In this document: positions 8,960-38,003 of the stretch, one piece after another
How the letters are laid out: each line of letters begins with the position of its first letter
Numbering within the stretch: position 1 is the stretch's first letter
From: Adineta vaga
Lineage: Eukaryota; Animalia; Rotifera
DNA length: 64,000 nt
Direction of reading: 5' to 3'
Assembly: GCA_021613535.1 (NCBI GenBank)
Contig: CP075496.1
Coordinates: 10,664,001 to 10,728,000 of the forward strand
Notes under the pieces: model-generated
Seen by the model: only the letters and a program-made list of their open reading frames with translations
Told to the model about the DNA's origin: nothing
Databases searched by the model: none
Position numbers and translations under genes: made by a program

Positions 8960-10019
8960 ATGTCAAAATCGAAATCACATAACTATAGACCAGCAACAGT
9001 GACATCAGTAACTGAAGAGATAAAAGTGGTTGTTGTTGGTAAGTTCAATTGATTAAAAGTTTATTTGATAATTATTCTATTAATAGGTGATGGTTATACA
9101 GGCAAAGTAAGAAAATTATAATGATTTCATTGGAAATTTGTATATAATTCTTTGAAGACAACATTATGTATTGTGTATAAAGATGGAGAATATCCACAAG
9201 ACCCTTATGTACCGACAATTTTTGAGAATTATGCTGGTAAATAAATGAAAACGAAGAATGAATTTAGTTTATACATGTATATATATATTATTAAACTATC
9301 TCTTAGCTACGGTGACAATAAACAATAAAAAATATATTCTAAACTTATTCGATAGTGCTGGACAAGTAAAGAAATTTCTTTTCTTCTAAAAAAAAGGAAC
9401 CATTCTTCATTTTCAATATTATTCTATTCAAGGAAGAATATGATCAACTACGTATCATGGCTTATCCAAATACCAATATATTTATTCTTTGTTTTTCTGT
9501 TGTTGATCCTGATAGTTATTCAAATATATTAAGTAAATGGATACCTGAATTAAATCGTATGTATTAAAGCAAAAAACATTTAAGTTTTGAAAGAAATACT
9601 TGACAAATATCATTTAAGGGTATGCACCACGAATACCAATAGTACTTGTTGGAACTAAATTAGATTTACGTAATGATCCATCAACATTAGAACAATTAGC
9701 AGAAAAGAACCAACGACCAATAACTCAATCTCAAGGAGAATATTTAGCACGTATTTGTTCAGCAAAAGCTTATTTAGAATGTTCATCGATGCTGAATTTT
9801 AATGTAAGAAATGTTTTTGAACAAGCCGTTGAAATACATAATTTACAAAACCAACGACATCGACATAGAATAAATGGTGGACGAAGAATTCTATCATCGA
9901 AATTTCAATCATGTTCATGGTTTGGATCATTATTATGTTGTACAAATGGATCTCGAACGTCATCATCGAAACGACATAAACGAACAAAAAAAGATAATCA
10001 GAATCGTTTTACAATGTGA
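8960..10019 (+). CDS. Rho-family small GTPase (Rac/Rho-like, atypical C-terminus)
   Basis: The spliced product is KVVVVGDGYTGKTTL, YVPTIFENY, LFDSAGQEEYDQLR.MAYP.T..F..CFS, VLVGTKLDLR (Rho insert), YLECSS. It has five short GT-AG introns. Confidence 0.92.
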
Positions 10020-10733
10020 GCTTAGAAGTTTTTTTTCTATTAATTTGTGCAATTTGCACAGTTCAACTGTGATGCAAAAACAAAAATAATTATTTCCATT
10101 GTTCGACATTTCTTTTGCTTTTTATTTGATTGATTTCAAATGAAATGAATTGTATTTGTTTTTCTTTTCTTTCAAATATGAAATTTGTTCAAAATTGAAT
10201 GTCTCATATAGTCACACAAGATGTTTATAATTTGGATTTTTGGATATTGTTCTCAGAAAAAAAGTTCGAATATAAGAAGAGAAATTGACTATGTACGTAT
10301 CTTTATGAGTAAAGTGACCTTGAATAATTCTGGAAAATGTAACATAAATCATCTGACTTGTAAGATAGTTGCTGCATTTGATAAACACTTTCGATCAATG
10401 ACACCGTCCAATAGCGCTCTCTATTTCTGTTTATTTATCTCATCCTTCAAAGAAACGAACGAACAATGATGTTCAAAAGAGAATAGCTTTGTCTGTGTAT
10501 GGACTAATATCATCTGGGACAGACAGACACACATGAGTTTTTCTTAAGAAATCAAAGACCCAATCAAATTGTATTAGATTTGTGATAATTTCGTTTTGTA
10601 CGTACACTGTGTCAAATGAAAACATATGTATATACTAATATTTATATAGTTTATTGTATCTGAATATATACTTTTGATGTATGATAATCAAACGTTTGCT
10701 TTAGATATTGTAAGCTTTTAGAAGATATAGCAC

Positions 10734-12564
10734 ATGGCATCATCTTCATCACCAACAGTGAGTAAATTAATCGTGCTATAATAAAATGAGAAATTTTAAT
10801 AATAATAATAATACTATATAAAAAACTTCTACATATTAATTTGTTTCTATTCAAATTAAAGGTCGTCTCACCAGATCCAACTGTTGATAATAACAGTGAT
10901 GGTAGTAGTGAAGAAGAAGAAGATGTTCGCTCATCAAATAAAACACGAACAGCTTATTCATGTATTCAAATTATCAAAGTACACCTTCGATAGTCTAATA
11001 TAGCGTTTGAACTAATAGTTCTATTTTTCTCTCTATTTCTTCTGACATATAGGAAAGTCATCGACAACAGATTTATGCAGTTGAAGTTAATACTCAAGTA
11101 CAGTATCAAAATGGAATTCTATTTGCTAGTGTTGGTGCCAATTCTGTATGTATTTTGAATTGATTTCAATGATTTGTAAAAGTATTTATTTTCCAAATAG
11201 ATTCAAATATATAAATTCGATACGAATACAAATAAAACACAATTAGTGCATGCTTATCTAGATCCTGATGTAAATCATTGTTTAAATGAAGCGAACTGTA
11301 ATCGATTGAATTTCATATTTTTTTAAAGGCAAATGAAGAATATTTTGCATGTGCATGGACGACAATTGATGATAAAAGTGAAGATTCACCGAAAATTCTT
11401 CTTGCAGCTGGTGGAGAACGTGGTGTCATTCGTGTTCTGGATATTCATCGAAAGGCACAGCATACTGCGGTTAGAAAATACAAAATTTCTTATTATCTAT
11501 CTATGCTTATTCAATCTAACTTTTTAGCTTTTACAAACAGGGGCTATTAATCATATAACATTTGCCAAAGCCAAACCTAACCTTCTCTGTACAGCTAGTA
11601 AAAGTACGAAGATAGACGATGTTGATTCGTTTTCTTTTCTATTGTTATTCATATTCCAGATTTTACGATAACATTATGGGATGTTCTTTCATCCATGTGT
11701 CTTGCTGTCTTTCATGGACCCAATGGTCATACAGATCAAGTTCTTTGTGTGGTAAACAAATAAATTTCTAACATTATGTATATATACGAATGATTACTCA
11801 AAGGATATAAATGATTCATGCACAATGCTCGCTTCAGCTAGTATGGATCGATCTGTATTTGTATGGTCATTAACAAGTGATAAAATTCGTGAACAAATCG
11901 ATTTAGCTGAAAATCCGATTCATGAACAAAAACGTCGATTAATCAAAGCATATCCTGTCGCTTTTGCAGATATTGAAGCTAAAGCTAAAACACTTCATTC
12001 ACATTATGTTGATAATGTTCAATGGTATGGTGATGTATTACTTTCTCGAGTAAGTTCATCGTTTTTATTTTCGATAAATTTATCTAAATTCTAAGATCAT
12101 TCTTCTTTCTAGTCGGCTGATAATACATTTTGTTTATGGCAACCAATTCTTGGTAATACGACGAAAGCATCATCATTTAAATTACTTTTGAAATGGGTTG
12201 TCAATGAAAAGGAATATATTTGGTTTCTCAAATTTGATATTTGTCGTGCTAGTCAAGTAAAATTTGTAGAAATGAATGTTATTTGTTACTTGTTTTGTTC
12301 GTCTTTAGTTACTTGCTATTGGTACATTGGATGGTCAAATTCAAGTATGGGATCTTCGCCATCATATGCATAATCCATCTGTGGAGTAAATGAAACAGTT
12401 GTTGTTTGATTAGATAATCTTTGCAATATTTTATATTTAGTTTTGTAAAATTGAAAAATCAAAATTCAAAAGCAAAAATTAGTCGCGTGTCATTCAATTA
12501 TGATGGTTCAATCTTAGTAGCTTGTTCCGATGATAGTCGTATCTTTATTTGGAAACGAAAATAA
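10734..12564 (+). CDS. EED: Polycomb PRC2 WD40 subunit EED/ESC
   Basis: Motifs HRQQIYAV, DPDANEEYFACAW, LAAGGERGVIRV, GHTDQVL, SASMDRS..VW, HSHYVDNVQWYGD..LS, EYIWFLKF, SFNYDGSILVACSDD..I..W. Aromatic residues sit at the methyl-lysine cage positions. Many short introns, and the start codon is inferred. Confidence 0.9.
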
Positions 12565-12920
12565 ACAATGTATGACTTCTTTTTCTTCTTTTGTTATTTT
12601 GTTATAATTATGTTACTATTGTACAGATGATATTCAATATAAAGAAAAGATAAATGTGCTTTTTTTAAATACGAGTTTCAATTTCAATATTCGTAAAAAA
12701 GTATATTGACGAGAAAGATTTTATCGAATGTTATTTATGTTAGAAAGCAAGCGATGCTCAAATAGCCGCCCGATATTTTCTTGTTAAAATCTGTCCTATA
12801 TTTGATAATTTTATATTATGAAATACTGTGAGAAACCTATCAGATGCTTAATATTGTTAAATATAGTAACGATTGTTCCCCTCTCTCCACATTTACTCAG
12901 AAAACGAATATTAAACTAGA

Positions 12921-13811
12921 ATGGCATATATGATGATACTGATATTGTCGTTGTTGATGATTCTATCAATCTCTATCTATGCTAAAGTCTATCGTCCTGT
13001 TGTACTTATGCATGGTATCACATCAACAGCTAGAGACTTGGATCAATTTGCTGGTTGGATTAATCAAACGTATCCAGGTATTTACGTTATATCGGTAGAG
13101 ATTGGCAATGGATACGATGATTCTTTTCTTTTACCAATGAATCGTCAAGTTGAACTTTTTTGCAATACAGTACGATCTGATCCTCAACTTCAACATGGAT
13201 TTAACATGCTTGGTTTTTCACAGGGTAGTATAATTGTTCGAGCGGCTGTTGAACGTTGTTCATTACCTGTCTATAATCTTATTACATTGAGTGGTATTAA
13301 TCAAGGCGTTTTTGGTGTTCCTAATCTTCAAGAACTTCCTCGACAATTTCGAGAATTAATTAGTGAATTTGCTTATGAGGATGCAATTCAAGATATTATT
13401 AGTGTTGCAGGTTATTGGCGTGATCCATATCAATTGGATAAATATTATCGACGTTGTCGTTTTCTTCCAGACATTAACAATGAACTAGCTGTCAGAAATG
13501 AAACTTATAAGATGAATATGTTGAAATTAAATGCATTTGTCATGACTTACTCCGATGTGGATGAGATTGTCACACCTGGTCTTTCAGGTTGGTTTTTAGG
13601 TTTTAATCCAAAATCATTAGTAGTAGAATCCTGGAATCAATCTCGACAATTCACTGAAGATCTTATTGGTTTACGTACATTATGGGATGAAGGGAAAATA
13701 TATCGATTTACTTCGCACGTACCACATGGTAGTTCTGATCATACACCAAATAAAGATTTTATCTTTCAAAATATTATGCCATTTTTTAATAATACACTAC
13801 CTGATATGTAG
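12921..13811 (+). CDS. Palmitoyl-protein thioesterase (PPT1-family lysosomal thioesterase), intronless
   Basis: Signal peptide, RPVVLMHG, nucleophile elbow GFSQG, QGVFGVP, YWRDP, FLPDINNE, DEIVTP, EDLIGLRTL and a C-terminal His. Confidence 0.92.
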   Translation: MAYMMILILSLLMILSISIYAKVYRPVVLMHGITSTARDLDQFAGWINQTYPGIYVISVEIGNGYDDSFLLPMNRQVELFCNTVRSDPQLQHGFNMLGFSQGSIIVRAAVERCSLPVYNLITLSGINQGVFGVPNLQELPRQFRELISEFAYEDAIQDIISVAGYWRDPYQLDKYYRRCRFLPDINNELAVRNETYKMNMLKLNAFVMTYSDVDEIVTPGLSGWFLGFNPKSLVVESWNQSRQFTEDLIGLRTLWDEGKIYRFTSHVPHGSSDHTPNKDFIFQNIMPFFNNTLPDM

Positions 13812-23904: not shown

Positions 23905-24903
23905 TCATAGTTGTATTCCCTTTAATCGATGGCGTATTCCGTCGATGATTGCCAACTGATGACAAGATTTCTTTATTTCTTCATAAAAATTTTCTAAGAC
24001 TGTAAACTTCCAATAATCTTGTTTCCGAGACATCAGATGATAATTATGACCATAAGATAGATAAGTTAAGCGTTTGACTTTAACTTGCTTGTCAACTAGG
24101 AGCATTACGGCATGAGCACATCCATCACCAATATATTCTCGAAGCATGTAATCATCTTCAACGAGTTCACGAATAAAATGTTGTACTTGTTCGGATTCAT
24201 AGTACCATTTCAAACGAATAATAAAAAAATTATTGTAAATACAAGTGATAGTAAAAGGTTTACCAATGAATAAATGCTGTAGAAGTGGTTTTAAGGGTTC
24301 AATTGCTTCGTTATACAATGCTCGATAAGCATAATCGAGATTTTTTCGCTTCGTATATTCAAAAAGATCTTCTTGAGTATTGTCAGAAAAGTATGAATCA
24401 TCATCCATTCTCATCAAATAATCATAACCACCATTTCGAACTGTTGGATGATAAAATACATCATACGTCCAAAATCGACACATCAAACGATATTCCATTG
24501 ATTTGCCTAAGTCGGAAGTACTCAACGGCTTAACCGATGTTGTAAAATTGATGAGAACAAACGAAATGTTGAGTTGAGTGTTATTTCTTTGTACACATGA
24601 TAGTATGTATTGTTGCATTTGTGAAGTGAAGTTTTGATCATGAAAGATGAGAAATGGATAGGATGAATTTGTTTGAACTGAATGAAAATGCATGACAGAA
24701 TGAATCATATTGATAGTCAAAAGAATAGATCGATTGGTACTACGCATCAATGTCACAATTACACCACGTGCATCTACATACATGTGCGGGTGTAATAATG
24801 AATGATCCGTTGTATATATAGTATAATAAATCAAAATAACAGAAATAAGAAGTATGATCATTCCTTTTTTCAAAGATATATAGAGACTGAAGTTATTTGC
24901 CAT
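23905..24903 (-). CDS. GT15-like (KRE2/MNT1 family) alpha-1,2-mannosyltransferase, copy A, intronless
   Basis: Type II TM anchor, YPFLIFH, YRLMCRFW..DVFYHP....GYDYLMRMDDDS, DLF......LDY.YR, IYNNFFI..L.W, and a GD motif near the C-terminus. Confidence 0.8.
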   Translation of the reverse strand: MANNFSLYISLKKGMIILLISVILIYYTIYTTDHSLLHPHMYVDARGVIVTLMRSTNRSILLTINMIHSVMHFHSVQTNSSYPFLIFHDQNFTSQMQQYILSCVQRNNTQLNISFVLINFTTSVKPLSTSDLGKSMEYRLMCRFWTYDVFYHPTVRNGGYDYLMRMDDDSYFSDNTQEDLFEYTKRKNLDYAYRALYNEAIEPLKPLLQHLFIGKPFTITCIYNNFFIIRLKWYYESEQVQHFIRELVEDDYMLREYIGDGCAHAVMLLVDKQVKVKRLTYLSYGHNYHLMSRKQDYWKFTVLENFYEEIKKSCHQLAIIDGIRHRLKGIQL

Positions 24904-26235: not shown

Positions 26236-27243
26236 TTAGTGTGTCATATTTATTCGTGTTAAAATAGGTTTAGATTCACGAAGCACGGTCAACTGATAAC
26301 ACGATCTGTTAATTTCTTCATAAAAGTCTTTTACTAGAATAAACTTCCAATACTTTCGTTCTGCAGTCATTACATGATAATTATGACCATAAGATATATC
26401 GAAAATATGTTTCGATCTAACACTATTATCAATTTGAAGCATCTCTGCATGAACACATCCATCACCGATGTATTGTCGCAATATCAGATCATCTTGAATA
26501 AGCTCACGAATGAATCGTTGCACTTGTTCAGATTTATAGTACCATTCCAAACGAATAATGAAAAAGTTATTGTAAATACAAGGAGTATCATTTTCAGAGA
26601 TATTTACAAATCGTTTCAGGATATCTTGCATTTCCGCTTTCGATTCCCAATATGCTGCTCGATAAACATAATCTAGTTTTTGTGCATCAGTATAGGCAAA
26701 GAGATCATATTTAGTCATATTGGATATATATGAATCATCATCCATTCTCATCAAATAATCATAACCACCATTTCGAATTGCTGGATGATAAAATACATCA
26801 TATATCCAAAATCGGCACATTAAACGATATTGAATTGATTTTGCTGATTGTGAATTCTGGACAGATTGTACTGCTGTTGTAAAATTAAAAAGAGCAAACG
26901 AAATAGTTATATCTTTGTTGTTTCTAAGTACGCACGAGAATATGTGTTGTTGCATGTGAGAAGTAAAGTTCTGATCATGAAAAATAAGAAATGGATATGG
27001 CGAATTTTCATCAATTGTATGAAAACGAATGACAGAATTAATCATATTCATAGTAAGAAACATCGATTGATTAGTACTTCGCATTAAGGTCACAATTACT
27101 CCTCGTGGGCGCTTATTCGATGAAGTAGGGATAGAATTGAAGTTTGAATGTTGATTATAAGCATTGGTATATAGTTGATAGATAATAGTTAATACAATAA
27201 TGACTAAAAATATTTTAAAGTACCAATACCGTTTTAAACTCAT
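26236..27243 (-). CDS. GT15-like mannosyltransferase, copy B, intronless
   Basis: Same motif series as copy A (YRLMCRFW, YDYLMRMDDDS, CIYNNFF, YIGDGC) with an N-terminal TM helix. Confidence 0.8.
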   Translation of the reverse strand: MSLKRYWYFKIFLVIIVLTIIYQLYTNAYNQHSNFNSIPTSSNKRPRGVIVTLMRSTNQSMFLTMNMINSVIRFHTIDENSPYPFLIFHDQNFTSHMQQHIFSCVLRNNKDITISFALFNFTTAVQSVQNSQSAKSIQYRLMCRFWIYDVFYHPAIRNGGYDYLMRMDDDSYISNMTKYDLFAYTDAQKLDYVYRAAYWESKAEMQDILKRFVNISENDTPCIYNNFFIIRLEWYYKSEQVQRFIRELIQDDLILRQYIGDGCVHAEMLQIDNSVRSKHIFDISYGHNYHVMTAERKYWKFILVKDFYEEINRSCYQLTVLRESKPILTRINMTH

Positions 27244-28016: not shown

Positions 28017-29464
28017 ATGGCTCCGAAAGGAGGGGGTGGTGGTGCTGGCGCGAAGAAGCTAAACAATAGTTTCGACAGTCAACAGACATAATCATCCACA
28101 GTAACAAAAACACCAACAACAACGACCAGTTCACAAAGAACTGGCCTAGTCGGCAGCACGCCCATGCCAAAGAAAAACAACCAGCAGCCATTCAGCATCG
28201 CTCGTCTTGTGCTAGAGGGAGCCAAAATTACTAAATTGGCATTAAATGATATTTTGAAGCAACACTTTAGCGACATCCAAATTACTGACATTCAACTCTG
28301 ACGTTCAGGCAATTTTACCTTGTATGCTTATGATGTTAAATCGTTCAATCGTCTTCTCAACGAATTAACAACAACATTAGCTGCAAATGGTCAAACAGAC
28401 GTTAAAGTTTATGTTCCTCGATCTATTCAGCGGATCAAGGATACAGAAAAGGTTGCTTTCGCCAAACGGGTCGATCTTGAAATTCCTGATGATCGAATAA
28501 CAGAAGCACTAAAGGCCATTGGTTTTGATGTTACAAATGTTACTCGTCTCACCAGCAAAGATGGAAAGACCCCAACAAGAACAATCAAAATATCATTTAA
28601 TGATGTTCAAAACCGCAACGCCTTCGTGTATTCTGGTTTGCAGGTGGATTGTATGCACTTCACCGCCGAACCAGCATCACAAAACAACAAGCCGGTACAA
28701 TGCTTCATCTGCTTGCAATACAACCATGTGGCCAAATACTGCAAAACGAAGCAACAAGTATGTGCCAAATGTGGTGAAAACCACAAAATGGACCAATGTA
28801 CTGTTGCCAACGATGCAGCCAAATGCCACAACTGTAAAGGTAATCATTTAGCTACTTCTACTGATTGTCCACAATTCAAAGATCAGGAAAAAAGAATGCT
28901 AAACTTGATTAACCAATACTTAACAGAAAGCAGACCAACAACAACCACTTCCCACCATTACCAAACCTATTCCAACAACAACAAAATAGCTTCCAAAATG
29001 ACTTATTCGATCAAATGTTCAATGCATTTAGTAGTAAGATGGAAAAACTAATCGAAGAAACAACAAGCCGATTATTCCGCAAGCTACAGCAAAAGATCAA
29101 ATGTATCGAAAAGTCAATTGGATTATATGGAAATAGCCAAGATGATGCTTCAACGCACTCTGACTCTGATTCTCAGGAAGAAAGTCAAGTAGTTAAGCAC
29201 ATCAAAGCTAGTAAAATTAAAAATCAACAGAAAAATCAACCCGCAACAACCGATTCTTCGATTTCAACCTCTTCAAAGGTCAAAACAGCTTCAAACATCC
29301 GTTCTCCAAAACAACATCCAACACAAGATCAAACTGAAGCTGCAAATTCACACAAGAGACATCGTCCGTCGGACAGTCCACAAGACGAAACGACGAAGAA
29401 AAACAACAACAAAGACCTTAAAACGAGTGACATCGATGATTCGGATATGCCACATCAACATTAA
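28017..29464 (+). pseudogene. LINE ORF1, gag-like with three CCHC zinc knuckles (disrupted)
   Basis: Knuckles CFIC..YNHVAKYC, CAKCGENH...C, CHNCKGNH.A....C, then FPPLP. In-frame stops at ~28089 and ~28299 and a frameshift near 28950. Confidence 0.88.
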
Positions 29465-31947
29465 CACCATAACCAAACACAAAGATGAACTCTTAGCCCG
29501 ATTCTCCAAATACGGCGTTATTTCGATGAATGAAACTAATCTTAAGAGTGAACGTCAGTTATCTCTTTGGGGTTACAACGTTTTCAGAAATGATAGAGTA
29601 GGTAAATCTGGTGGTGGAGTTCTTCTTGCAATCCAGCGTCACATTAAATGTCGTGAAGTATACAACAAGACAACACAAGCAAATGAAGTGATAGCAGTAG
29701 AGATAGAAACTCAAGGTTTCAAATCAATACTTATATCCTCCATTTACGTCCCTCCAACAGCCAAAATTAATCTTAGCACCTTCGATGACCTATAAAATAT
29801 TAACAACAACTGTATCATCGTAGGTGATTTCAATGCAACATCGCAGGAAAAGGGATCATGAAAGATGAATTCAAAACGAAGACAGCTGCAAGAATTATTT
29901 AAAGAAGGTTTAATCGACTGTGTCGACGATGATTATACAACATTTGAAAGACATGATTACGAAGAAAAACTTGATTGGATACTAGCAAGCCAACCTCTCT
30001 ATCATTTATAACAAATATTGAAACACATGCATTAATCGGCACAGTTACTGGACACAAACCATTAACTTTCGATATTCCTCTGAGAGTGGAAGTCAAATTC
30101 CCCTCTCCAAGGATATCATTTAATTTCAACGCAGCAAAGTGGCCATTATTTAGAAGTAAATTAGACCAATAATTGATACTATGGAACATGGATCGTAGAT
30201 TAAATTCAACATTAGACTTAGAAGAATATTCATCGTTTATTACCAACAGCATTTTGGTAGCAACACGAGAAGCTATTTCACGTATTAAACAAAAGATTAC
30301 ATCGTATTCACCAAGTGAAGCTTCGAAAAGCTTGATTCTACTTAAGCATCGAGCGTATCGAAGATGGAAGAAGACTGGAGATGATATAGATAAACATCAA
30401 TTCTACACGTCGAAAGTCTTACTTACAAATTCACTTTGGAATGACAGAAGAAACAACTTTAACAAGTTAATGTCGTCATTATGTCAGAAGAAAATGTATT
30501 CGAATGCAGTTTGGCGAACGGTGCGCAAGTTCCACAACAAACGGATCAAGCAAACCTATGCGAACGTCATGAAATATAATAACACTACAGCAACGTCGGA
30601 CTAGAAGAAGGCAGATCTTTTTGCGGATTATTTCCAAAATGAGGTCTACTTCGAAGCGCCTGACTCGCTGCCGTTTCATGATAAAGTAACTCGTCGAACA
30701 GGATTCATAAGAAAAGGAATGGCAACTAATTCAAACACAACTAGGTGGAAATTAATCACTGTTAATGAAGTTAAATATCACCTTAAACAACTTCGAAACA
30801 GCGCCACAGGCTCTGATAACATCCATAATAGATGTTTGAAGAATTATTCAAAATAACTTGTTCAACATCTCACCAATTTGTACAATGTAGTTTTGAATCA
30901 AGGTTACATTCCTGATACGCGGAAACAAGCAAACATTATTCTTCTATTAAAGCCGATGAAAGACAGCTGACAGCTGAAAGCCCGAAGCGTCATTCGACTG
31001 TTGTTCTCTTCGATATCAAAGCTGCTTTTGACTCAGTATGGCATGGTGGACTAATTTACAAACTGAATGATCTACGTCTTCCTCGCTACATGGTCAGTTA
31101 CCTGATCTCTTTCCTGCACAATCGAACAGCCGCAATTGAAATTGAAAATGTGTTATCACGTTCATTCCAGCTCAAGAGCGGTACACCACAAGGATCTCCG
31201 TTATCACCATTATTATATATCATATACACGGCAGATTGGATGAATGGTATACCGTCTCATACTGAACATGGATTATTCGCCGACGATACAGCTCTATGGA
31301 CATCAACCATCACCACAACAGGTCTTAACGTAAGACTTCAACAGTCCGTAGATGCATTTGAAAGTTGGTGCTCTTCGTGGAAACTGAAGCTGCAGCCAAC
31401 AGAAACGGAGCTGATTCATTTCAGCATACGCCCAAGAAAGAAGTACAAACATCCAATGGAGGTGAAAGTGAAAAACAGGATCATTACTCCAGTGGAACAT
31501 ACAAAATACTTAGGCGTTATTATCGACAAACGTTTAAACTGGCGAAAACATCTCGATCATATAGAAAGTAAGATTGGTCCTCGCATCAGTCTGCTTCGCT
31601 ATCTATCGAGAAATTCGTACGAACCAAACATGAAGATAATGATAAACATTTTCAAATCAATTATGCGCACAATCATTATTTATGGTTATCCTGTTCTGCT
31701 TACTGCTGATCAACACATATGGAACCGACTGCAGATTATGCAAAACAAAGCACTACGCGCAGCTCTCGGTTTACGCATATATACATTCACAAAATATATT
31801 CATCAGATCAGCAACACACCAAAAATCAAAGAATATGCAACAGGATTACTTCAAAAAGCGATACAAACTGCTACCTTAAATAATGACACGACACTCCGGA
31901 ATCATTTACAAGACATTTTCGACCAGATCAAAAACAACACCTCCTGA
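29436..31947 (+). pseudogene. LINE ORF2, AP-endonuclease + reverse transcriptase (disrupted)
   Basis: ICHININ, SMNET, RNDR...GGGVLL, SIYVPP, IVGDFNA, LDWIL, GHKP, FDIKAAFDSVWH, GTPQGSPLSPLLY, LFADD, KYLGV..D..LNW. Multiple stops, frameshifts and an internal RT deletion. It overlaps ORF1 by 29 nt. Confidence 0.9.
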
Positions 31948-32837
31948 ATATCTATATAACTACTACAACGATATTCAAGACTATTCTTGTGCTGGCCGAA
32001 TCTGTACAAAAAATGTTATGTCGGAATCGTGTACTACGAGTTTGCTTCACATATATATCAAGAAATGAAGCAATGCTTTGGCTGAATCTTCCACAACATC
32101 CATTACATATGTTGCTCTGTCTCTCTTCATCATATTATTGTGTACGAAGTAAACAGACTATTACGCGTTCCACTCTTTCTTTTCTTTTTCTTCTCATAAC
32201 CAATATGTATCACTCTTCTCTATTCTTCATTGTATTGTAACACACACCCTTCCTTTGATGCTTTTCACTTGTTACTACTTCAACATTCACTAATTTAACT
32301 TGTAACTATCTTTTCTCTGCACGGACATACGACACTAGTCATGAGTCCGTTTTTCCTTTCTTCTTTTCTTTCAGCGTTCGTGTAATAACGTACACCCGTT
32401 GTTTTCTATCGACTTGTAACGTTATTATACTGAATAAAGCCTTGTTACCAAAAAAAAAAGTTTCGAACATCACTACATGGCTAGGTCGATCATCAAAAAT
32501 ATTCTGGAAATATGATGTCATCTTATAGGAGTTCACGAATGGAAATTACCGATAACTAATGTTATTACCAAAGAAATTATAGTTCTCGTTTTCAAATATT
32601 TAAATGAAAAGATCTTTTTGGATTCTTTCGAAAAATATGAAGTAATATTCATTAGATGCTGAAATATCAGATGAGAAAGATACCGTATGTTCAAAGTCGA
32701 ACAATATCGTATCAGGATCTCTATAACATAAAGAATTCGCAAGTGAAATTGATTTTTTAATGTTAATGAAAATCATGAATAGAGTATTTATGATTAGAAA
32801 TTTTCTACTAAACAAAAGCTATTTATTTATTTCGAAT

Positions 32838-35252
32838 TCATACATTTTTCTTTCCAAATTCTATATTTTTTAGTCTTCGATAGAAATCTTCGTTGATCAT
32901 TGAAAAATCTTCTTCTTGTTGTTTCATTTGATTACGTACATCTAAATATTGTGCCATACAATATGCAACAGAACGATCTCGTTGAAAAAAGATCTTATTT
33001 CCAAATAGATGAGGACTTGTTGCTAAATGCCAAAGATCTTCATAAATAAATATACATATACCACGAACAAAACCACCTCGACAAAGAACCGATTCTGGTC
33101 GATCTGCCCATATTTTATATCTTGTCATAAATGACATTTGATTAAGATCATGATCATATGGATAATAACCTGGTGTTTCTTTCCAACGATTAATCATCGA
33201 ATAATAATGTTCATCAGGTACTATAGTTCCGTTAAGAAAATTATATAAATCATTGACACGTTTACTCGTATGAATATATTCTAAAGTGACACGTGATAAT
33301 AAGACATGAAATTCACCTTTATAAAATGGTAATGTAAGAGATGATGGTAATGTTCGATTCAATGAACGAAATGGATTTTTTTGTCGTAATTGTGAATAAT
33401 ATGGTAATGAAGTAACATCGTTTTGATTATTATAGAGTTTTAAGATTTGAACTAATTCAGCATTTGTTTTTAAAGGAAAATCGGAATTAGCTAAATTAAA
33501 ATAATATTTCCATGATTTTGCTCGTTGAAGAAGTTCTTTTTGACATAAATGTTCTGCTTCTAATACTGAAAATTGACCCCATGTTACATTAATACGTTGT
33601 TGTAGTAGAAATATATTTGTTACGCATGACACACGTTCTTGAATTGCTTGATAAAGTGAGAGAGGTGTTTTAGAATCAACATGTATACAATAATAATTCG
33701 ATGTTCGATAGATTGTATGTAATAAAAATTCAAATTGATCGAGATTAGAATAGATAAGAATAGTAAAAGCTATTGGATGAAATAATTCTTCAGATGAAAC
33801 AAATGATCGATCTTTAAAAAAACTACAGTCCTTTGGAAATGATAAATATGTTGATGCTTCATGATTTAATTGTGATACTTCATCTGTAGTTAAGATTAGA
33901 TTTGGATAACGAATGAGACGACCACATACAGTTGATGTAAGAAATCTATCAAGTATTGTTGGAGATCTTGGCCATGAAGTTGATTGTAAGATGATAAGCC
34001 AAATCAGGAGATATATACAAATACCAATAAAAATAAAACGACGATGAAAGTCTAAAATAAAAGAATAATTGAATATAATCTTCTAACATTGTAGAATTTA
34101 GTTATCGAATGATATTTATTAAAGATAATCGATCTTTATGAAGTCGAAGAACTATCAACTGTTGACATGATTTCTGAGTTTCATTATAGAACGTCTTCAT
34201 AACTTTAAACTCCCAACTTTCTTCGCCCGAAGACATTATATGAAAATTATGACCATAGGATATGTTTTTCAGTTGTTCTGCTTTCACACTTTTATCAACA
34301 CTTAACATCGCTGCATGAACACATCCATCACCAATATATTCTCGAAGCATATAATCATCCTTTACAAGTGTATGAACCAAATGTTGTACTCGTTTCGATT
34401 CATAGTACCATTTCAAACGAATAATAAAAAAATTATTGTAGATACATTCAGAGTAGTCTGGTTTATCGTCGGCATATTGATCTCGAACTGCTTGTAAGGC
34501 TTGACACATTTCCACATACAATGCTCGATAAGCATAATCGAGATTTTTTCTCTTCGTATATTCAAAAAGATCTTCTTGAGTATTGTCAGAAAAGTATGAA
34601 TCATCATCCATTCTCATCAAATAATCATAACCACCATTTCGAACTGTTGGATGATAAAATACATCATATGTCCAAAATCGACACATCAAACGATATTCCA
34701 TTGATTTGCCTAAGTCGGAAGTACTCAACGGCTTAACCGATGTTGTAAAATTGATGAGAACAAACGAAATGTTGAGTTGAGTGTTATTTCTTTGTACACA
34801 TGATAGTATGTATTGTTGCATTTGTGAAGTGAAGTTTTGATCATGAAAGATGAGAAATGGATAGGATGAATTTGTTTGAATTGAATGAAAATGCATGACA
34901 GAATGAATCATATTGATAGTCAAAAGAATAGATCGATTGGTACTACGCATCAATGTCACAATAACACAACGCGTTTTAGTAGATTTATATTTTGATAGGA
35001 ACAGATGTTGATTTTGAAAAATATACAATTTTGTAATAACAGTAACAAGAATAAGAATCTTTATTATTATATATAAAGATAGAAACGATCGATAAGTACT
35101 TTTCATGTATAACTGAAAACGATGAATAAAATATTGAAATCTATATAGTTTCAGATGTTTCTTGTTTCTAAAATGTTAAAAATATGCAAGAATGAATCGA
35201 TTGGCTTACATGCTTTGAAAATACGTCTTCGATATGTTTTGATCAACCACAT
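32838..35252 (-). CDS. GT14 core-2/I-branching beta-1,6-N-acetylglucosaminyltransferase; 2 exons (35252-35210, 34051-32838)
   Basis: Exon 2 is open from the acceptor at 34053-34052 with a TM helix, EE.FHPIAF.I, IYR..NYYCIHVDSK, V.WG.FSVLEA, WKYYFNL...DFPLKTN.ELV.IL, PDEHYY, RGICIF..EDL. It has no ATG before the TM. Exon 1 MWLIKTYRRRIFKA|gtaag joins in phase. Upstream in-frame ATGs exist at 35285, 35306 and 35312. Confidence 0.85.
34102..35106 (-). CDS. GT15-like mannosyltransferase, copy C, intronless, nested in the GT14 intron
   Basis: 334-aa ORF with a TM anchor and the same motifs as copies A and B. It lies between the GT14 donor (35209) and acceptor (34052). Confidence 0.82.
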   Translation of the reverse strand: MKSTYRSFLSLYIIIKILILVTVITKLYIFQNQHLFLSKYKSTKTRCVIVTLMRSTNRSILLTINMIHSVMHFHSIQTNSSYPFLIFHDQNFTSQMQQYILSCVQRNNTQLNISFVLINFTTSVKPLSTSDLGKSMEYRLMCRFWTYDVFYHPTVRNGGYDYLMRMDDDSYFSDNTQEDLFEYTKRKNLDYAYRALYVEMCQALQAVRDQYADDKPDYSECIYNNFFIIRLKWYYESKRVQHLVHTLVKDDYMLREYIGDGCVHAAMLSVDKSVKAEQLKNISYGHNFHIMSSGEESWEFKVMKTFYNETQKSCQQLIVLRLHKDRLSLINIIR

Positions 35253-36630
35253 GATATCAGCAAGTAAAAGAACGTTATCGTTCATGTTCTGCTTGATTGA
35301 TTTCATCGTCATTTTTACCTTCTCTTAACATTTCGAAATAAAATATGACAGCAAGAAAAAGAACATCTTCATCAAAAATAACGATCGATCATAGATATAA
35401 TTTCTACTACAATCATATTTCCCTTTATCTCAAAACATATTGAAGAATATCTAACAGTACAGTGACAACCTAGGATCCATACATTTTTGTTTGTCATATT
35501 ATACAATCCTCTTTTTAAGCATATATAATACCATAAAATAAATATTTTCTTCGTTTCTTTTTTTCTAATAACTATCGTATTGATGAACTGCAAAAAAAAA
35601 ACGATTCATACATAAATATTTTACTAGAATTCATTCTGTGTAAAGAACTGTCTTTAGCATCTATATAACATGTGATGGGTGTTAGAGTAATCAAGATTAG
35701 TTTCCATGGTATATATGAAATTCATAGTGAGAAAATGTTAGTCCAATAATCAATGATAGGTAAATACTTGAAATTTATCAAATCTGTACTTTTCTTCCTC
35801 TCGTCCCGATCAATTATTTTTTTTTTTTGATGATTGTACTATTTGCTCTTGAGAAGATCAACTTTATTTGAAATCTGAATTACATTATGCAGACATCTTT
35901 GAACTGGTAACGATTACCACGTCAGTTATAATCACTATATCTTTATTTTAAATATGGATGACAAAGAAACGGTATTCGTAGGTTATTTTCTTTTATCACG
36001 ATTTGATTTGCATTTGAAACATTATTCATCGACTAGTTTCAGTAGTTAAAAATTTAGATCGTACAATAAAACATCTATGAAATTATCTATATGAAGAATT
36101 AAATACAGCATATAGTTGCATTTGAATTCCGTCATTCAAAAGACGACCAGGAGAGACTTTCTTCTCTATTTCAATAATTAATAAACAATTTGAATTTTTC
36201 GTAAGTAAAGATATCAACGTAGGGATTGACGAGAATGATTTACCAAGATTGTCATTGTATGCTCACTAGCTTAAAGGGCGATACCCAATAGACTTGTACT
36301 GAGTAAAGCAAGAGAGTGCAAATATTTTCCAACGATGAATGATTCATCAATTGATTTAATACATTGTCCTTCCTTCATAGATTGATCTTTCCTTGGGATA
36401 TGTTTCCGGAACTTTACATGATGAAAATATTTGATGAGTAAGACTGATTCATAGTGAATATTTTATTTCTTATGAAATTCAAGAAAAGAAAACAAATAAT
36501 CTAATAATTGCACATGATTTTAACCTAAATGTTGTTTTTTTCAATCTTACTAATTTATCTCAAACAGAGGAGAAGAAAAGAGACTTGATTCTATTATACA
36601 TTGAGATATTATATCTAAATTTTGGTTTTT

Positions 36631-37782
36631 TTAATCTTGTGATTCTGATTGTTGACTGGAATCAGATAGAGATCGTTTATTACGTAAACGTTTAGTTCTG
36701 AAAATTTCAAATCAAATAATTATCACTAGTGAACGAATTAATGAAACTTACTTTGCTCGTCTTTTACTCGATGTAGATGTATTTGTCATGGTACGAGAAG
36801 TGGGTTTTTCACTACTTGTTGTACTTTCATCTTCATCTTCAATATCTTCATCACCATCATCATTTAATGGTTGAGTTGACTGAGTATTATTTTCTGAAAC
36901 TAATCAAACATCGTTCGCTTTATTGGTCATAATCAGATAAAAACATACGATTACTATTTTTCTTATTGCCAGATAATTCTTGCATGATTTCACGATGCTT
37001 ACGATTAGTTTTTCGACCTAATGAGAATAAAATTTTCCATTTTTAATAAAGGAAATTAAGATAATCACATACGTTCTTTTTCTCGTTCACGTTTGAGACG
37101 ATCACGACCGAGCAACTAAATATATTCTAACTTTTTTTTTCTAAAAGATTTCAAGCGATTAAATACATACTGTATAGGATGTGGCAGATGAATATGAAAA
37201 CAATCGATCAGATTCACGAAATTTCGATGATTTATCGATCGAACTAATAAAAAAATATGATGATTTTTCTTATTGATCAAAATAAAAGAATATTCATTTC
37301 TCATGTGTGATAGATTAGATATCCCTGGAGACATCGGTCTATTTTCTTTTTATTCTACAAACAACGATCGATAATTTTAATGAAAAACTCACTTATTATT
37401 TCCACTACCACTCGTTAAACAATTGCTCCATCCTCGAATACAATTTCCTGTATCTTGTGTTTGTTTAAGATAACTGGTTTCAAATGCATAAATTTGCTCT
37501 TCAATATCTGATAAAGATTTCTATATAGAGTATATTAGAAGAAAAATAAAAGAACAATCCTCTTCAACAAACTTCAATTTCTTCTTTTTTCTTCAATAAT
37601 TGTGCTAATTCAGCACGCGTATCACGAAAAGGATTATTCGTTGTAGATTTCTCTTTTGTCGATGGACTTGATGGTGATGATGCTGTTACGGATGATGATG
37701 CTGGTGCTGCAGCAGCTGTAGAAGAATTTGTAGTGGTGTTGGTATTGGTGGTAGAAGTAGGAGTAGAAGATGAATCTTTCAT
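36631..37782 (-). CDS. MEAF6: NuA4/MYST complex subunit Eaf6/MEAF6
   Basis: DTRAELAQLLKKKEEIE.SL.DIEEQIYAFETSYL..TQ..GN.IRGW and KFRESDRLFSYSS.TS, followed by a basic/acidic tail across short introns. Confidence 0.9.
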
Positions 37783-38003
37783 TCTTTTTTTTCTTTTTTG
37801 AAACAAAACAAAAACAGAGACTAATTAATATAGATATTTATCTAAAGAAATAGTTGAAGAAGAATCTTTATTTCAATTGAAATTTTTATTTTATTCTTTC
37901 ATCATAAGAGTGCATTTGTCTTTTTTTAAAGATACAATAGAACAAGAAACAAAATAAGATGATTATTATTAATTGTCTATAGAATCTTGCTTTGTCAATT
38001 TGT

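What the first reader, a model, noticed from the sequence alone, without database searches (positions are those of the whole stretch)
32838..35312. Two glycosyltransferases in one transcription unit: a foreign-type GT15 gene nested, same strand, inside the only intron of a GT14 gene
Seen: GT14 exon 2 (34051-32838) has a clean acceptor (ttttattttAG) but no ATG before its TM helix. The fitting first exon is 35252-35210 (MWLIKTYRRRIFKA-t|GTAAG), which joins in phase (t+ac=Tyr) to give a typical type II basic tail plus TM. The 1158-nt intron is about 20 times the usual size here and is almost entirely filled by the intact 334-aa GT15 ORF. GT15-C has its own acceptor (ttcatcgttttcAG, 35114-35113) 6 nt before its ATG. 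It also has an AATAAA (34120-34115) positioned so cleavage would fall near its stop and before the GT14 acceptor ~50 nt downstream. Cis-splicing exon 1 to 35113 is out of frame with GT15. Inference: one pre-mRNA gives either GT14 (long-intron splicing) or GT15 (proximal acceptor, possibly SL trans-splicing, plus intronic polyadenylation). That would be a mutually exclusive glycosylation switch and a route for an acquired gene to borrow a host promoter.
Basis: partly seen in the sequence, partly recalled or inferred. Interest (0 to 1): 0.88.

Follow-up and report, generated by a model that had tools for sequence, protein, structure and literature searches.

The report
GT15 gene nested inside GT14 intron

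Summary
The GT14 body (34051-32838, minus strand; Pfam Branch, E 1.4e-30) has no in-frame ATG for 140 codons. The proposed first exon (35252-35210, MWLIKTYRRRIFKA plus one base, then GTAAG) is real by comparison. The same 14-codon, phase-1 exon lies upstream of a GT15-like gene, and the GT14 body lies downstream behind a TTTTAG acceptor. This holds at 9 loci: A. vaga, A. ricciae (two copies), A. steineri, Rotaria sordida and four metagenomic bdelloids, several in the same gene neighbourhood. In A. steineri the GT15 has decayed to debris in a 715-nt intron while exon 1 and the GT14 body stay intact. Two public gene models (A. ricciae, A. steineri) already use this exon. Both genes are under purifying selection.

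The mechanism is untested. Indirect signs fit a shared 5' region with internal processing:
- only 46-103 ATG-poor bases separate the donor from the GT15 start;
- an AG abuts that start in 5 of 9 loci;
- AATAAA sits in GT15's last codons.

A regulated switch is not shown. This scan has noted similar same-strand nested genes elsewhere in this genome. Interest is moderate.

The parts
35278..35303 (-). Conserved non-coding motif AAATCAATCAAGCAGAACATGAACGA, ending about 25 nt before the exon 1 ATG. Likely part of the 5' leader or core promoter of the unit.
   Evidence: It is present upstream of exon 1 in A. ricciae (two copies), A. steineri, R. sordida, L009, L015 and L018. The spacing from AAGCAGAAC to the ATG is 32-33 nt at most of these loci. 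The reading frame is not kept: 1-nt gap in A. steineri, in-frame stop in L015. It is not a common motif in this genome and is not next to other GT15 copies.
35210..35252 (-). GT14 exon 1, coding part: MWLIKTYRRRIFKA plus the first base (T) of a Tyr codon. This is the basic cytoplasmic tail of a type II membrane protein.
   Evidence: The same 14 codons and the same phase occur at 9 loci. Public models P0003 (A. ricciae) and P0004 (A. steineri) start with it.
34052..35209 (-). Phase-1 intron of GT14, 1158 nt, with donor GTAAGC and acceptor ttttattttAG. It is almost filled by GT15-C.
   Evidence: The orthologous introns are 1001-1154 nt, and 715 nt where GT15 has decayed.
35168..35181 (-). Conserved TTTTAACATTTTAG, 42 nt after the donor. 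It looks like a branch point plus acceptor. Splicing exon 1 to it would give T+AA, a stop.
   Evidence: It is conserved in A. vaga and both A. ricciae copies. The AG is lost in A. steineri, where GT15 is dead. Its function is inferred only.
35113..35114 (-). AG of ttcatcgttttcAG, 6 nt before the GT15-C ATG. Candidate (trans-)splice acceptor.
   Evidence: An AG lies 0-6 nt before the GT15 ATG in A. vaga, L006, L007, L015 and L018, but not in L014, L008 or L009; L016 was not scored. Use of this acceptor was not tested.
34102..35106 (-). GT15-C: intact, intronless 334-aa ORF for a GT15-like (Kre2/Ktr-type) glycosyltransferase with an N-terminal membrane anchor.
   Evidence: dN/dS is 0.25-0.33 against the nested copies of other species.
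34115..34120 (-). AATAAA inside the last codons of GT15-C, 13 nt before its stop codon and 69 nt before the first base of GT14 exon 2.
   Evidence: It sits at the same place in A. ricciae (two copies), and nearby in R. sordida and L018. It is also in non-nested GT15-B. It is absent in L009 and L015. Use as a poly(A) signal was not tested.
32838..34051 (-). GT14 exon 2: last two bases of the Tyr codon, membrane helix, stem and Branch (core-2/I-branching) catalytic domain, with the stop at 32840-32838.
   Evidence: dN/dS is 0.16-0.20 against the Adineta and L009 orthologues.
32822..32831 (-). Two overlapping AATAAA copies just after the GT14 stop codon. Likely the GT14 poly(A) signal.
   Evidence: Read from the sequence. 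Not tested.

Best explanation
This is an old, conserved, same-strand nested gene pair of bdelloid rotifers.

Shown by comparison:
- The animal-type GT14 gene has a 14-codon first exon (35252-35210), a 1158-nt phase-1 intron and a 1214-nt second exon.
- The intron holds a complete, selected, intronless GT15-like gene.

Inferred:
- Both genes are read from the one conserved 5' region upstream of exon 1.
- GT14 mRNA forms when the exon 1 donor is cis-spliced to the far acceptor at 34053-34052, which discards GT15 in the lariat.
- GT15 mRNA forms when the transcript is instead processed inside the intron. The likely route is spliced-leader (SL) trans-splicing at the AG next to its ATG, then cleavage after the AATAAA in its last codons, roughly 30-60 nt before the GT14 acceptor.
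- One transcript can then give only one of the two mRNAs. That follows from the layout. A regulated switch is not implied.
For: Structure:
- There is no in-frame ATG in exon 2.
- Exon 1, the phase-1 donor, the GT15 and the phase-1 acceptor occur in the same order at 9 loci. These are Adineta (three species), Rotaria and four metagenomic bdelloids. L006, L009 and L015, and L007 in part, keep the tubulin / NuA4 / carbonic anhydrase neighbourhood.
- The junction codon is Tyr at 7 of the 9 loci.
- The A. ricciae and A. steineri public models start MWLIK.../MWSTK....
- In A. steineri the GT15 is a stop-ridden remnant, while exon 1, both splice sites and the 420-aa GT14 are intact.
- Both genes are under purifying selection.

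Shared 5' region and internal processing:
- Only 46-103 nt separate the donor from the GT15 ATG.
- That interval holds 1 ATG against 5.7 expected, P about 0.015. Equal-length stretches upstream of exon 1 hold 10.
- The only strongly conserved non-coding block lies upstream of exon 1.
- An AG abuts the GT15 ATG in 5 of the 9 loci.
- AATAAA is embedded 69-73 nt before the GT14 acceptor in Adineta and Rotaria.
- Read unspliced, the exon 1 frame always stops 5-58 nt before the GT15 ATG.

Lead only, not support: an earlier follow-up in this genome reports a same-strand nested gene released by SL trans-splicing.
Against: - There is no RNA evidence of any kind. None of the 14 runs that hold the stretch is on record as RNA.
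- ATG depletion of the interval fits a mature 5' leader better than a discarded outron, so it also fits an own start site.
- The AG next to the ATG is missing in L014, L008 and L009.
- AATAAA is missing in L009 and L015, and it is also present in non-nested GT15-B, so it is no adaptation to nesting.
- In nematodes an acceptor downstream of a donor is normally cis-spliced (my knowledge). Here that would give an upstream ORF overlapping the GT15 start.
- The held literature reports SL trans-splicing in rotifers but no polycistronic transcripts (PMC7986045).
Confidence: 0.5

Rival explanations
1. Classic nested gene with its own promoter. The exon/intron structure is as described, but GT15-C is transcribed from its own start site, in or just after exon 1. 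It may or may not be SL trans-spliced, and it is otherwise uncoupled from GT14. The only interaction is that GT14 transcription must read through GT15's poly(A) signal.
For: - The donor-to-ATG interval is ATG-poor, as a mature 5' leader would be.
- A conserved block (TTTTAACATTYTAG) and, in A. vaga only, a TATATAG about 40 nt before the ATG lie in that interval.
- Paralogues GT15-A and GT15-B stand alone and must have their own promoters.
- Most known nested genes have their own promoters (my knowledge).
Against: - The interval is only 46 nt in L009, so a promoter there would have to overlap exon 1.
- No TATA-like element is conserved across species.
- The strongest conserved non-coding block lies upstream of exon 1, not inside the intron.
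Confidence: 0.3
2. Shared start site without trans-splicing. GT15 is translated from a transcript that keeps the start of the intron and is polyadenylated after GT15. Ribosomes first read the short exon 1 frame as an upstream ORF of 24-33 codons (or 14 codons after removal of the 42-nt mini-intron, whose junction makes a stop), then re-initiate at the GT15 ATG.
For: - Read unspliced, the exon 1 frame stops 5-58 nt before the GT15 ATG at all 6 loci examined.
- The interval is ATG-poor.
- Splicing to the conserved TTTTAG at +42 gives T+AA or T+AG, a stop, in A. vaga and both A. ricciae copies. An AG at +32 in R. sordida does the same.
Against: - Stops are frequent in AT-rich sequence, so early termination is expected by chance.
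- The mini-intron acceptor is not conserved outside Adineta.
- Re-initiation is inefficient, and the exon 1 ATG has A at -3, a good context.
- It does not explain the AG next to the GT15 ATG.
Confidence: 0.12
3. The two-exon model is wrong for A. vaga. Either GT14 is made as a GT15-GT14 fusion, as in the NCBI model I4U23_020578 (635 aa, donor inside GT15 spliced to 34051), or it starts at ATG 34089 through an assembly indel, or it is a 5'-truncated dead gene.
For: - Public annotations give fused models in A. vaga (P0001), A. ricciae (P0002) and R. sordida (P0018).
- Some metagenomic bdelloids have an in-frame ATG in the last codons of the intron.
Against: - The three fused models use three different junctions and drop either the GT15 anchor or the GT14 membrane helix. 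That is what a gene predictor forced to find an ATG would produce.
- ATG 34089 is out of frame.
- In A. vaga, both A. ricciae copies, L007, L009 and L015 there is no in-frame ATG between the upstream stop and the acceptor.
- The in-intron ATGs are not kept between close relatives (P0007 against L018).
- GT14 has an intact 404-codon frame with dN/dS 0.16-0.20.
- Exon 1 is conserved at 9 loci.
Confidence: 0.05

Closest known systems
Cholinergic gene locus (VAChT/unc-17 inside the first intron of ChAT/cha-1; nematodes to mammals; my knowledge)
   Same: A complete gene sits on the same strand inside the first intron of another gene with a related function. The two share a common upstream region, and alternative processing of a common 5' exon gives one product or the other.
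   Different: In the cholinergic locus the shared exon is non-coding and the shared transcript is shown by experiment. Here exon 1 carries the host's start codon and tail, the guest belongs to a family otherwise seen in fungi and algae, and no RNA data were obtained.
Ordinary nested (intronic) genes of animals, for example Drosophila Pcp in Gart or human OMG/EVI2A/EVI2B in NF1 (my knowledge)
   Same: A whole gene lies inside an intron of a host gene.
   Different: Those guests mostly lie on the opposite strand, in long introns, with their own promoters. Here the guest is on the same strand and fills the intron almost end to end (103 nt before it, 48 nt after it). Neighbouring introns in this genome are tens of bases long (tubulin ORF pieces).
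Spliced-leader-resolved operons (nematodes, tunicates, chaetognaths: PMC12460157) and the operon candidates this scan noted in the same genome
   Same: The genes run head to tail with gaps of tens of bases. The upstream gene's poly(A) signal sits just before the downstream gene's splice acceptor. An AG lies next to the internal gene's ATG.
   Different: The downstream unit (GT14 exon 2) has no start codon of its own. It needs an exon that lies upstream of the other cistron, so SL trans-splicing alone cannot resolve it. The held literature reports no polycistronic transcripts for rotifers (PMC7986045).
MAK16 nested in a COA1 intron, same genome (scan note s1-498382)
   Same: A same-strand nested gene in A. 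vaga. That follow-up reports release of the guest by SL trans-splicing and no evidence of a switch.
   Different: The genes are different, and I did not check that note. Here the guest is a non-metazoan-type gene and conservation was traced across 9 loci.

Membership tests
GT14 / Pfam Branch PF02485 (core-2/I-branching enzymes) | Match to the family profile above the curated cut-off | tested here: met
   107.2 bits against a cut-off of 23.4, E 1.4e-30. The best non-rotifer relatives are mollusc and hemichordate GCNT-like proteins at 35-40% identity.
GT14 / Pfam Branch PF02485 (core-2/I-branching enzymes) | Type II topology: short basic tail, then one membrane helix, before the catalytic domain | tested here: met
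   Read from the sequence. Exon 1 gives MWLIKTYRRRIFKA. Exon 2 starts FHRRFIFIGICIYLLIWLIIL. No topology predictor was run.
GT15 / Pfam Glyco_transf_15 PF01793 (Kre2/Mnt1/Ktr mannosyltransferases) | Match of the protein itself to the family profile above the curated cut-off | tested here: not met
   GT15-C has no hit at E below 0.1. Paralogue GT15-A scores 23.6 bits against a cut-off of 25.
GT15 / Pfam Glyco_transf_15 PF01793 (Kre2/Mnt1/Ktr mannosyltransferases) | Homology shown by profile or through intermediate sequences | tested here: met
   A 30-sequence bdelloid profile hits solved Ktr4 (7boo, E 1.8e-8; 5a07, E 6.6e-7) and Kre2/Mnt1 (1s4n, E 1.1e-4). Of 10 more distant profile hits tested, 9 are PF01793 above the cut-off. 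All 30 atlas look-alike clusters are PF01793.
GT15 / Pfam Glyco_transf_15 PF01793 (Kre2/Mnt1/Ktr mannosyltransferases) | Catalytic and metal-binding residues of the fungal enzymes are kept | tested here: inconclusive
   The Y-x-x-M-C-R-(F)-W block and the G-D-x-x-V-H block align with Ktr4. The fungal S-N-F-E block aligns with N-N-F-F in the bdelloid family, but only in a weak second stretch. No structure was predicted and no activity is known.
Same-strand nested (intronic) gene | Host exons flank the guest gene on the same strand | tested here: met
   Comparative evidence from 9 loci with the same order, phase and splice sites, plus one locus with a decayed guest.
Same-strand nested (intronic) gene | A spliced host mRNA that skips the guest | not testable with these tools
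No transcript-derived protein with the joined N-terminus is in the protein collection.
Cholinergic-locus-type shared first exon / SL-resolved polycistron | Both mRNAs start from one transcription start; a spliced leader on the internal cistron | not testable with these tools
   No reads. Only indirect sequence signs are available.

The most novel reading that the evidence does not exclude
One conserved promoter drives a single primary transcript. That transcript is either cis-spliced across 1.1 kb to make the animal-type GT14 mRNA, or cut up inside the intron (spliced-leader addition next to the GT15 ATG, then polyadenylation at the AATAAA in GT15's last codons) to make the GT15 mRNA. This would be a cholinergic-locus-like arrangement, kept since before the Adineta/Rotaria split, through which a gene of a non-metazoan family gained expression by sitting inside a host gene. 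The ratio of the two glycosyltransferases would then be set by splice-site competition.
Probability: 0.35. Interest if true: 0.7.

Novelty: new member of a known kind. Interest (0 to 1): 0.5.

Why it matters
- Annotation. The A. vaga (UJR33121.1), A. ricciae (CAF1158633.1) and R. sordida (P0018) models at this locus are chimeras. The nested GT15 of A. vaga is not called as a gene of its own.
- Domestication of a foreign-family gene. This is a clean, deeply conserved example of how a gene from a family otherwise seen in fungi and algae can be housed and kept functional inside an animal gene. It comes with a natural control: in A. steineri the guest has died and the host lives on.
- A test case for RNA processing. 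If the shared-transcript reading holds, the locus would show competition between cis- and trans-splicing in rotifers, where the held literature reports no polycistronic transcripts.
- Limits. Same-strand nested genes are a known kind, this scan has noted others in this genome, and no RNA evidence was obtained. The finding is solid as anatomy and open as mechanism.

Tried and rejected
1. Read evidence. The look-up of sequencing runs listed 14 holders, none on record as RNA. Later work stayed at or below 37700.
2. Exact look-up of GT15-C in public assemblies: not on record.
3. Cluster members of the spliced A. ricciae and A. steineri models: all are genome annotations, none transcript-derived.
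4. Long-range RNA pairing between the exon 1 region and the far acceptor, which would loop out GT15. A 15-nt pair exists in A. vaga, but duplex energies are unremarkable at the 5 other loci (z from -1.1 to +0.2). Rejected.
5. The upstream motif as a general promoter element or a GT15-linked element. It is specific to this locus and is not next to any other GT15 copy. Rejected.
6. A GT15 tree to show one origin of nesting. The nested copies group with same-species neighbours, which fits the A/C conversion tract. It is not informative, so orthology rests on position.
7. An ohnologous or allelic GT14 copy with a short empty intron. None exists in this assembly: the best paralogue is 35% identical. 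None of the 9 loci has an empty intron. The nearest Didymodactylos GT14 (48% identity) is a single exon with its own ATG and no GT15 upstream, but its orthology is unsure.
8. In-frame ATGs at the 3' end of the intron as the true start. They are sporadic and not kept between close relatives. Rejected.
9. Metagenome scan for more loci: only 2 found.
10. Rfam scan of 32000-37700: nothing.
The exons were handled by reference, and only the junction codon and reading-frame ends were computed in scripts.
Full report
**What is there**

On the minus strand the window holds, in order:
- a conserved non-coding block (35303-35278);
- an ATG at 35252, followed by 13 codons and one extra base (MWLIKTYRRRIFKA + T), ending at a GTAAGC donor at 35209;
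- 103 bases without an ATG;
- an intact 334-codon ORF (35106-34102);
- 48 bases ending in ttttattttAG (34053-34052);
- a 404-codon open frame down to the stop at 32840-32838.

The last frame is a GT14 enzyme (Pfam Branch, E 1.4e-30). It has a basic stretch and a membrane helix at its start. It has no in-frame ATG for 140 codons, and an in-frame stop lies just before the acceptor. T+AC across the 1158-nt gap gives Tyr.

**Which organism**

The window is part of a 100.8-Mb assembly in 6 pieces. The 100% protein hit is 'hypothetical protein I4U23_020578 [Adineta vaga]'.

**Is exon 1 real?**

I had no reads (see below), so I tested it by comparison. Two public gene models already begin with this exon:
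- A. ricciae CAF0942509.1 starts MWLIKNDRTRFSTA|YLSRR...
- A. steineri CAF1442255.1 starts MWSTKNYKKFTFKQ|YFNRR...

I then fetched the DNA of the relatives. At 9 loci I found the same parts in the same order:
- an exon of ATG + 13 codons + 1 base + GTAAG;
- a GT15 homologue on the same strand;
- a pyrimidine-rich AG;
- the GT14 body in phase 1.

The loci are A. vaga, A. ricciae L006 and L014, A. steineri L007, Rotaria sordida L008, and metagenomic bdelloids L009(-11), L015, L016 and L018.

The details agree:
- The exon 1 peptides are MWLIKTYRRRIFKA, MWLIKNDRTRFSTA (twice), MWSTKNYKKFTFKQ, MSLLNKNRRQYIQI, MWFSNSYRRYFFKK, MWLTNIRRRHPFRA, MRLVTGYRNYRFQR and MWLISNYRRHILKA.
- The junction codon is Tyr at 7 of the 9 loci.
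- The introns are 1001-1158 nt.
- L006, L009 and L015, and L007 in part, keep the neighbourhood tubulin / NuA4-like / carbonic anhydrase, then the unit. A. vaga has the tubulin and the NuA4-like gene.
- Exon 1 is 72-84% identical to A. vaga's, against 53-73% for the flanks, although synonymous sites between A. vaga and A. ricciae are near saturation (dS 0.9-1.0).

The A. steineri locus is the most telling. Its intron is only 715 nt. The GT15 in it is a remnant with internal stops and deletions (tblastn E 5e-20). Exon 1, the donor, the acceptor and a 420-aa GT14 remain intact. So exon 1 belongs to GT14, not to GT15.

**The guest gene**

GT15-C has no Pfam hit of its own, and paralogue GT15-A falls just under the cut-off. 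The wider evidence places it in GT15:
- A profile of 30 bdelloid relatives matches solved fungal GT15 enzymes: Ktr4 at E 1.8e-8 and Kre2/Mnt1 at E 1.1e-4.
- An exhaustive profile search finds 1386 relatives. Of 10 of the more distant ones tested, 9 are true PF01793 proteins.
- The atlas look-alike clusters are from green algae, diatoms and ascomycetes.
- Every close hit is a bdelloid or an unnamed environmental contig.

So 'GT15-like, of a family not otherwise seen in animals here' is fair. A donor was not sought.

The nested copies are under purifying selection (dN/dS 0.25-0.33), as is GT14 (0.16-0.20 for most pairs). GT15-C and GT15-A share a long identical stretch, which fits the conversion tract noted by the scan. 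Perhaps for that reason, a family tree groups nested copies with same-species neighbours and cannot show a single origin.

**How the two mRNAs are made**

This is inference only. The following points bear on it.
- The donor-to-ATG interval is short: 46-103 nt.
- That interval is ATG-poor. It holds 1 ATG at six loci against 5.7 expected, P about 0.015. Equal-length stretches upstream of exon 1 hold 10.
- The best-conserved non-coding block lies upstream of exon 1, with a fixed spacing of about 33 nt to the ATG. It is not coding, because the frame is broken in A. steineri and L015. It is specific to this locus.
- An AG lies 0-6 nt before the GT15 ATG in 5 of the 9 loci.
- AATAAA lies in GT15's last codons, 69-73 nt before the GT14 acceptor, in Adineta and Rotaria, with a similar one in L018. 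Non-nested GT15-B has it too, and L009 and L015 lack it.
- If exon 1 is left unspliced, its frame stops 5-58 nt before the GT15 ATG at every locus examined.

These points fit a shared 5' region with processing inside the intron. They also fit an own start site in or just after exon 1.

Background:
- The held literature reports SL trans-splicing in rotifers but no polycistronic transcripts (PMC7986045).
- Notes of this scan report operon-like clusters, and one same-strand nested gene (MAK16 in COA1) released by SL trans-splicing, elsewhere in this genome. I could not check these here and use them as leads only.
- If the promoter is shared, each transcript can give only one product. That follows from the layout, and nothing points to a regulated or desiccation-linked switch.

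**Annotation errors**

Three public models join part of GT15 to GT14: A. vaga (635 aa), one A. ricciae copy (679 aa) and R. sordida (652 aa). Each uses a different junction and drops a membrane anchor. I read them as gene-predictor artefacts.

**What I could not do**

I sent nothing from those places to any tool afterwards.
- None of the runs that hold the stretch is on record as RNA.

**Verdict**

- The anatomy is confirmed and is old, at least as old as the Adineta/Rotaria split.
- The nested-gene reading is supported.
- The 'one pre-mRNA, two exclusive products' reading is plausible but untested.
- The closest known analogue is the cholinergic locus.
- Same-strand nested genes are a known kind, and this scan has noted others in this genome.
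- I rate the finding a new member of a known kind, of moderate interest.

Noticed in passing
window 35278-35303 (-): A 26-nt block (AAATCAATCAAGCAGAACATGAACGA) upstream of exon 1 is better conserved across bdelloids than the exon itself, with about 33 nt from AAGCAGAAC to the ATG. It is not coding and not a common motif in this genome. Its function is unknown (start site, leader element or factor binding site).
   Followed up: partly
window 34102-35106 and 32838-34051 (-); proteins P0001, P0002, P0018: Public gene models in A. vaga (UJR33121.1, 635 aa), A. ricciae (CAF1158633.1, 679 aa) and Rotaria sordida (P0018, 652 aa) fuse part of GT15 to GT14, each at a different junction. They look like annotation chimeras. 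GT15-C of A. vaga is not called as a separate protein.
   Followed up: partly
L007:6044-6758 and 9053-13797: In A. steineri the nested GT15 is a decayed remnant. Two further GT14 copies follow in tandem; the sequence shown for a 403-aa copy of that cluster (P0009) starts with its own ATG at the point where exon 2 begins (MLACNRRILY...), so it needs no exon 1.
   Followed up: partly
window 35400-37500: Other bdelloids have a carbonic anhydrase gene between the NuA4-like gene and exon 1. In A. vaga this roughly 2-kb stretch has no long ORF, and tblastx against the A. ricciae stretch finds nothing. The gene seems lost or moved.
   Followed up: partly
window 26249-26254 (-) and 23905-24903 / 26236-27243 (-): Non-nested GT15-B also carries AATAAA in its last codons, at the same place as GT15-C. 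GT15-A has AATAAA right after its stop. This family seems to have almost no 3' UTR.
   Followed up: partly
window 23905-24903 vs 34102-35106 (-): GT15-A and GT15-C are 72% identical overall but share a long run of identical residues (about residues 47-210). This fits the recent gene conversion noted by the scan.
   Followed up: partly
window 28320-31947 (+): ORFs with zinc-knuckle and reverse-transcriptase-like sequence lie between GT14 and GT15-B. They probably belong to a non-LTR retrotransposon that is absent from the A. ricciae locus.
   Followed up: no
L002 and L003 (G000:C4:14.49 Mb and 14.55 Mb): Two near-identical GT14 paralogues (35% identical to this one) lie about 50 kb apart in opposite orientation, with the same neighbour genes. 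This looks like an inverted duplication. L003 seems to have a short first exon and an intron of about 120 nt just before the membrane helix.
   Followed up: no
window 37772-37815: These places tripped the read tool's filter, which by the tool's own words also trips by chance. I did not examine them and sent them to no tool afterwards.
   Followed up: no
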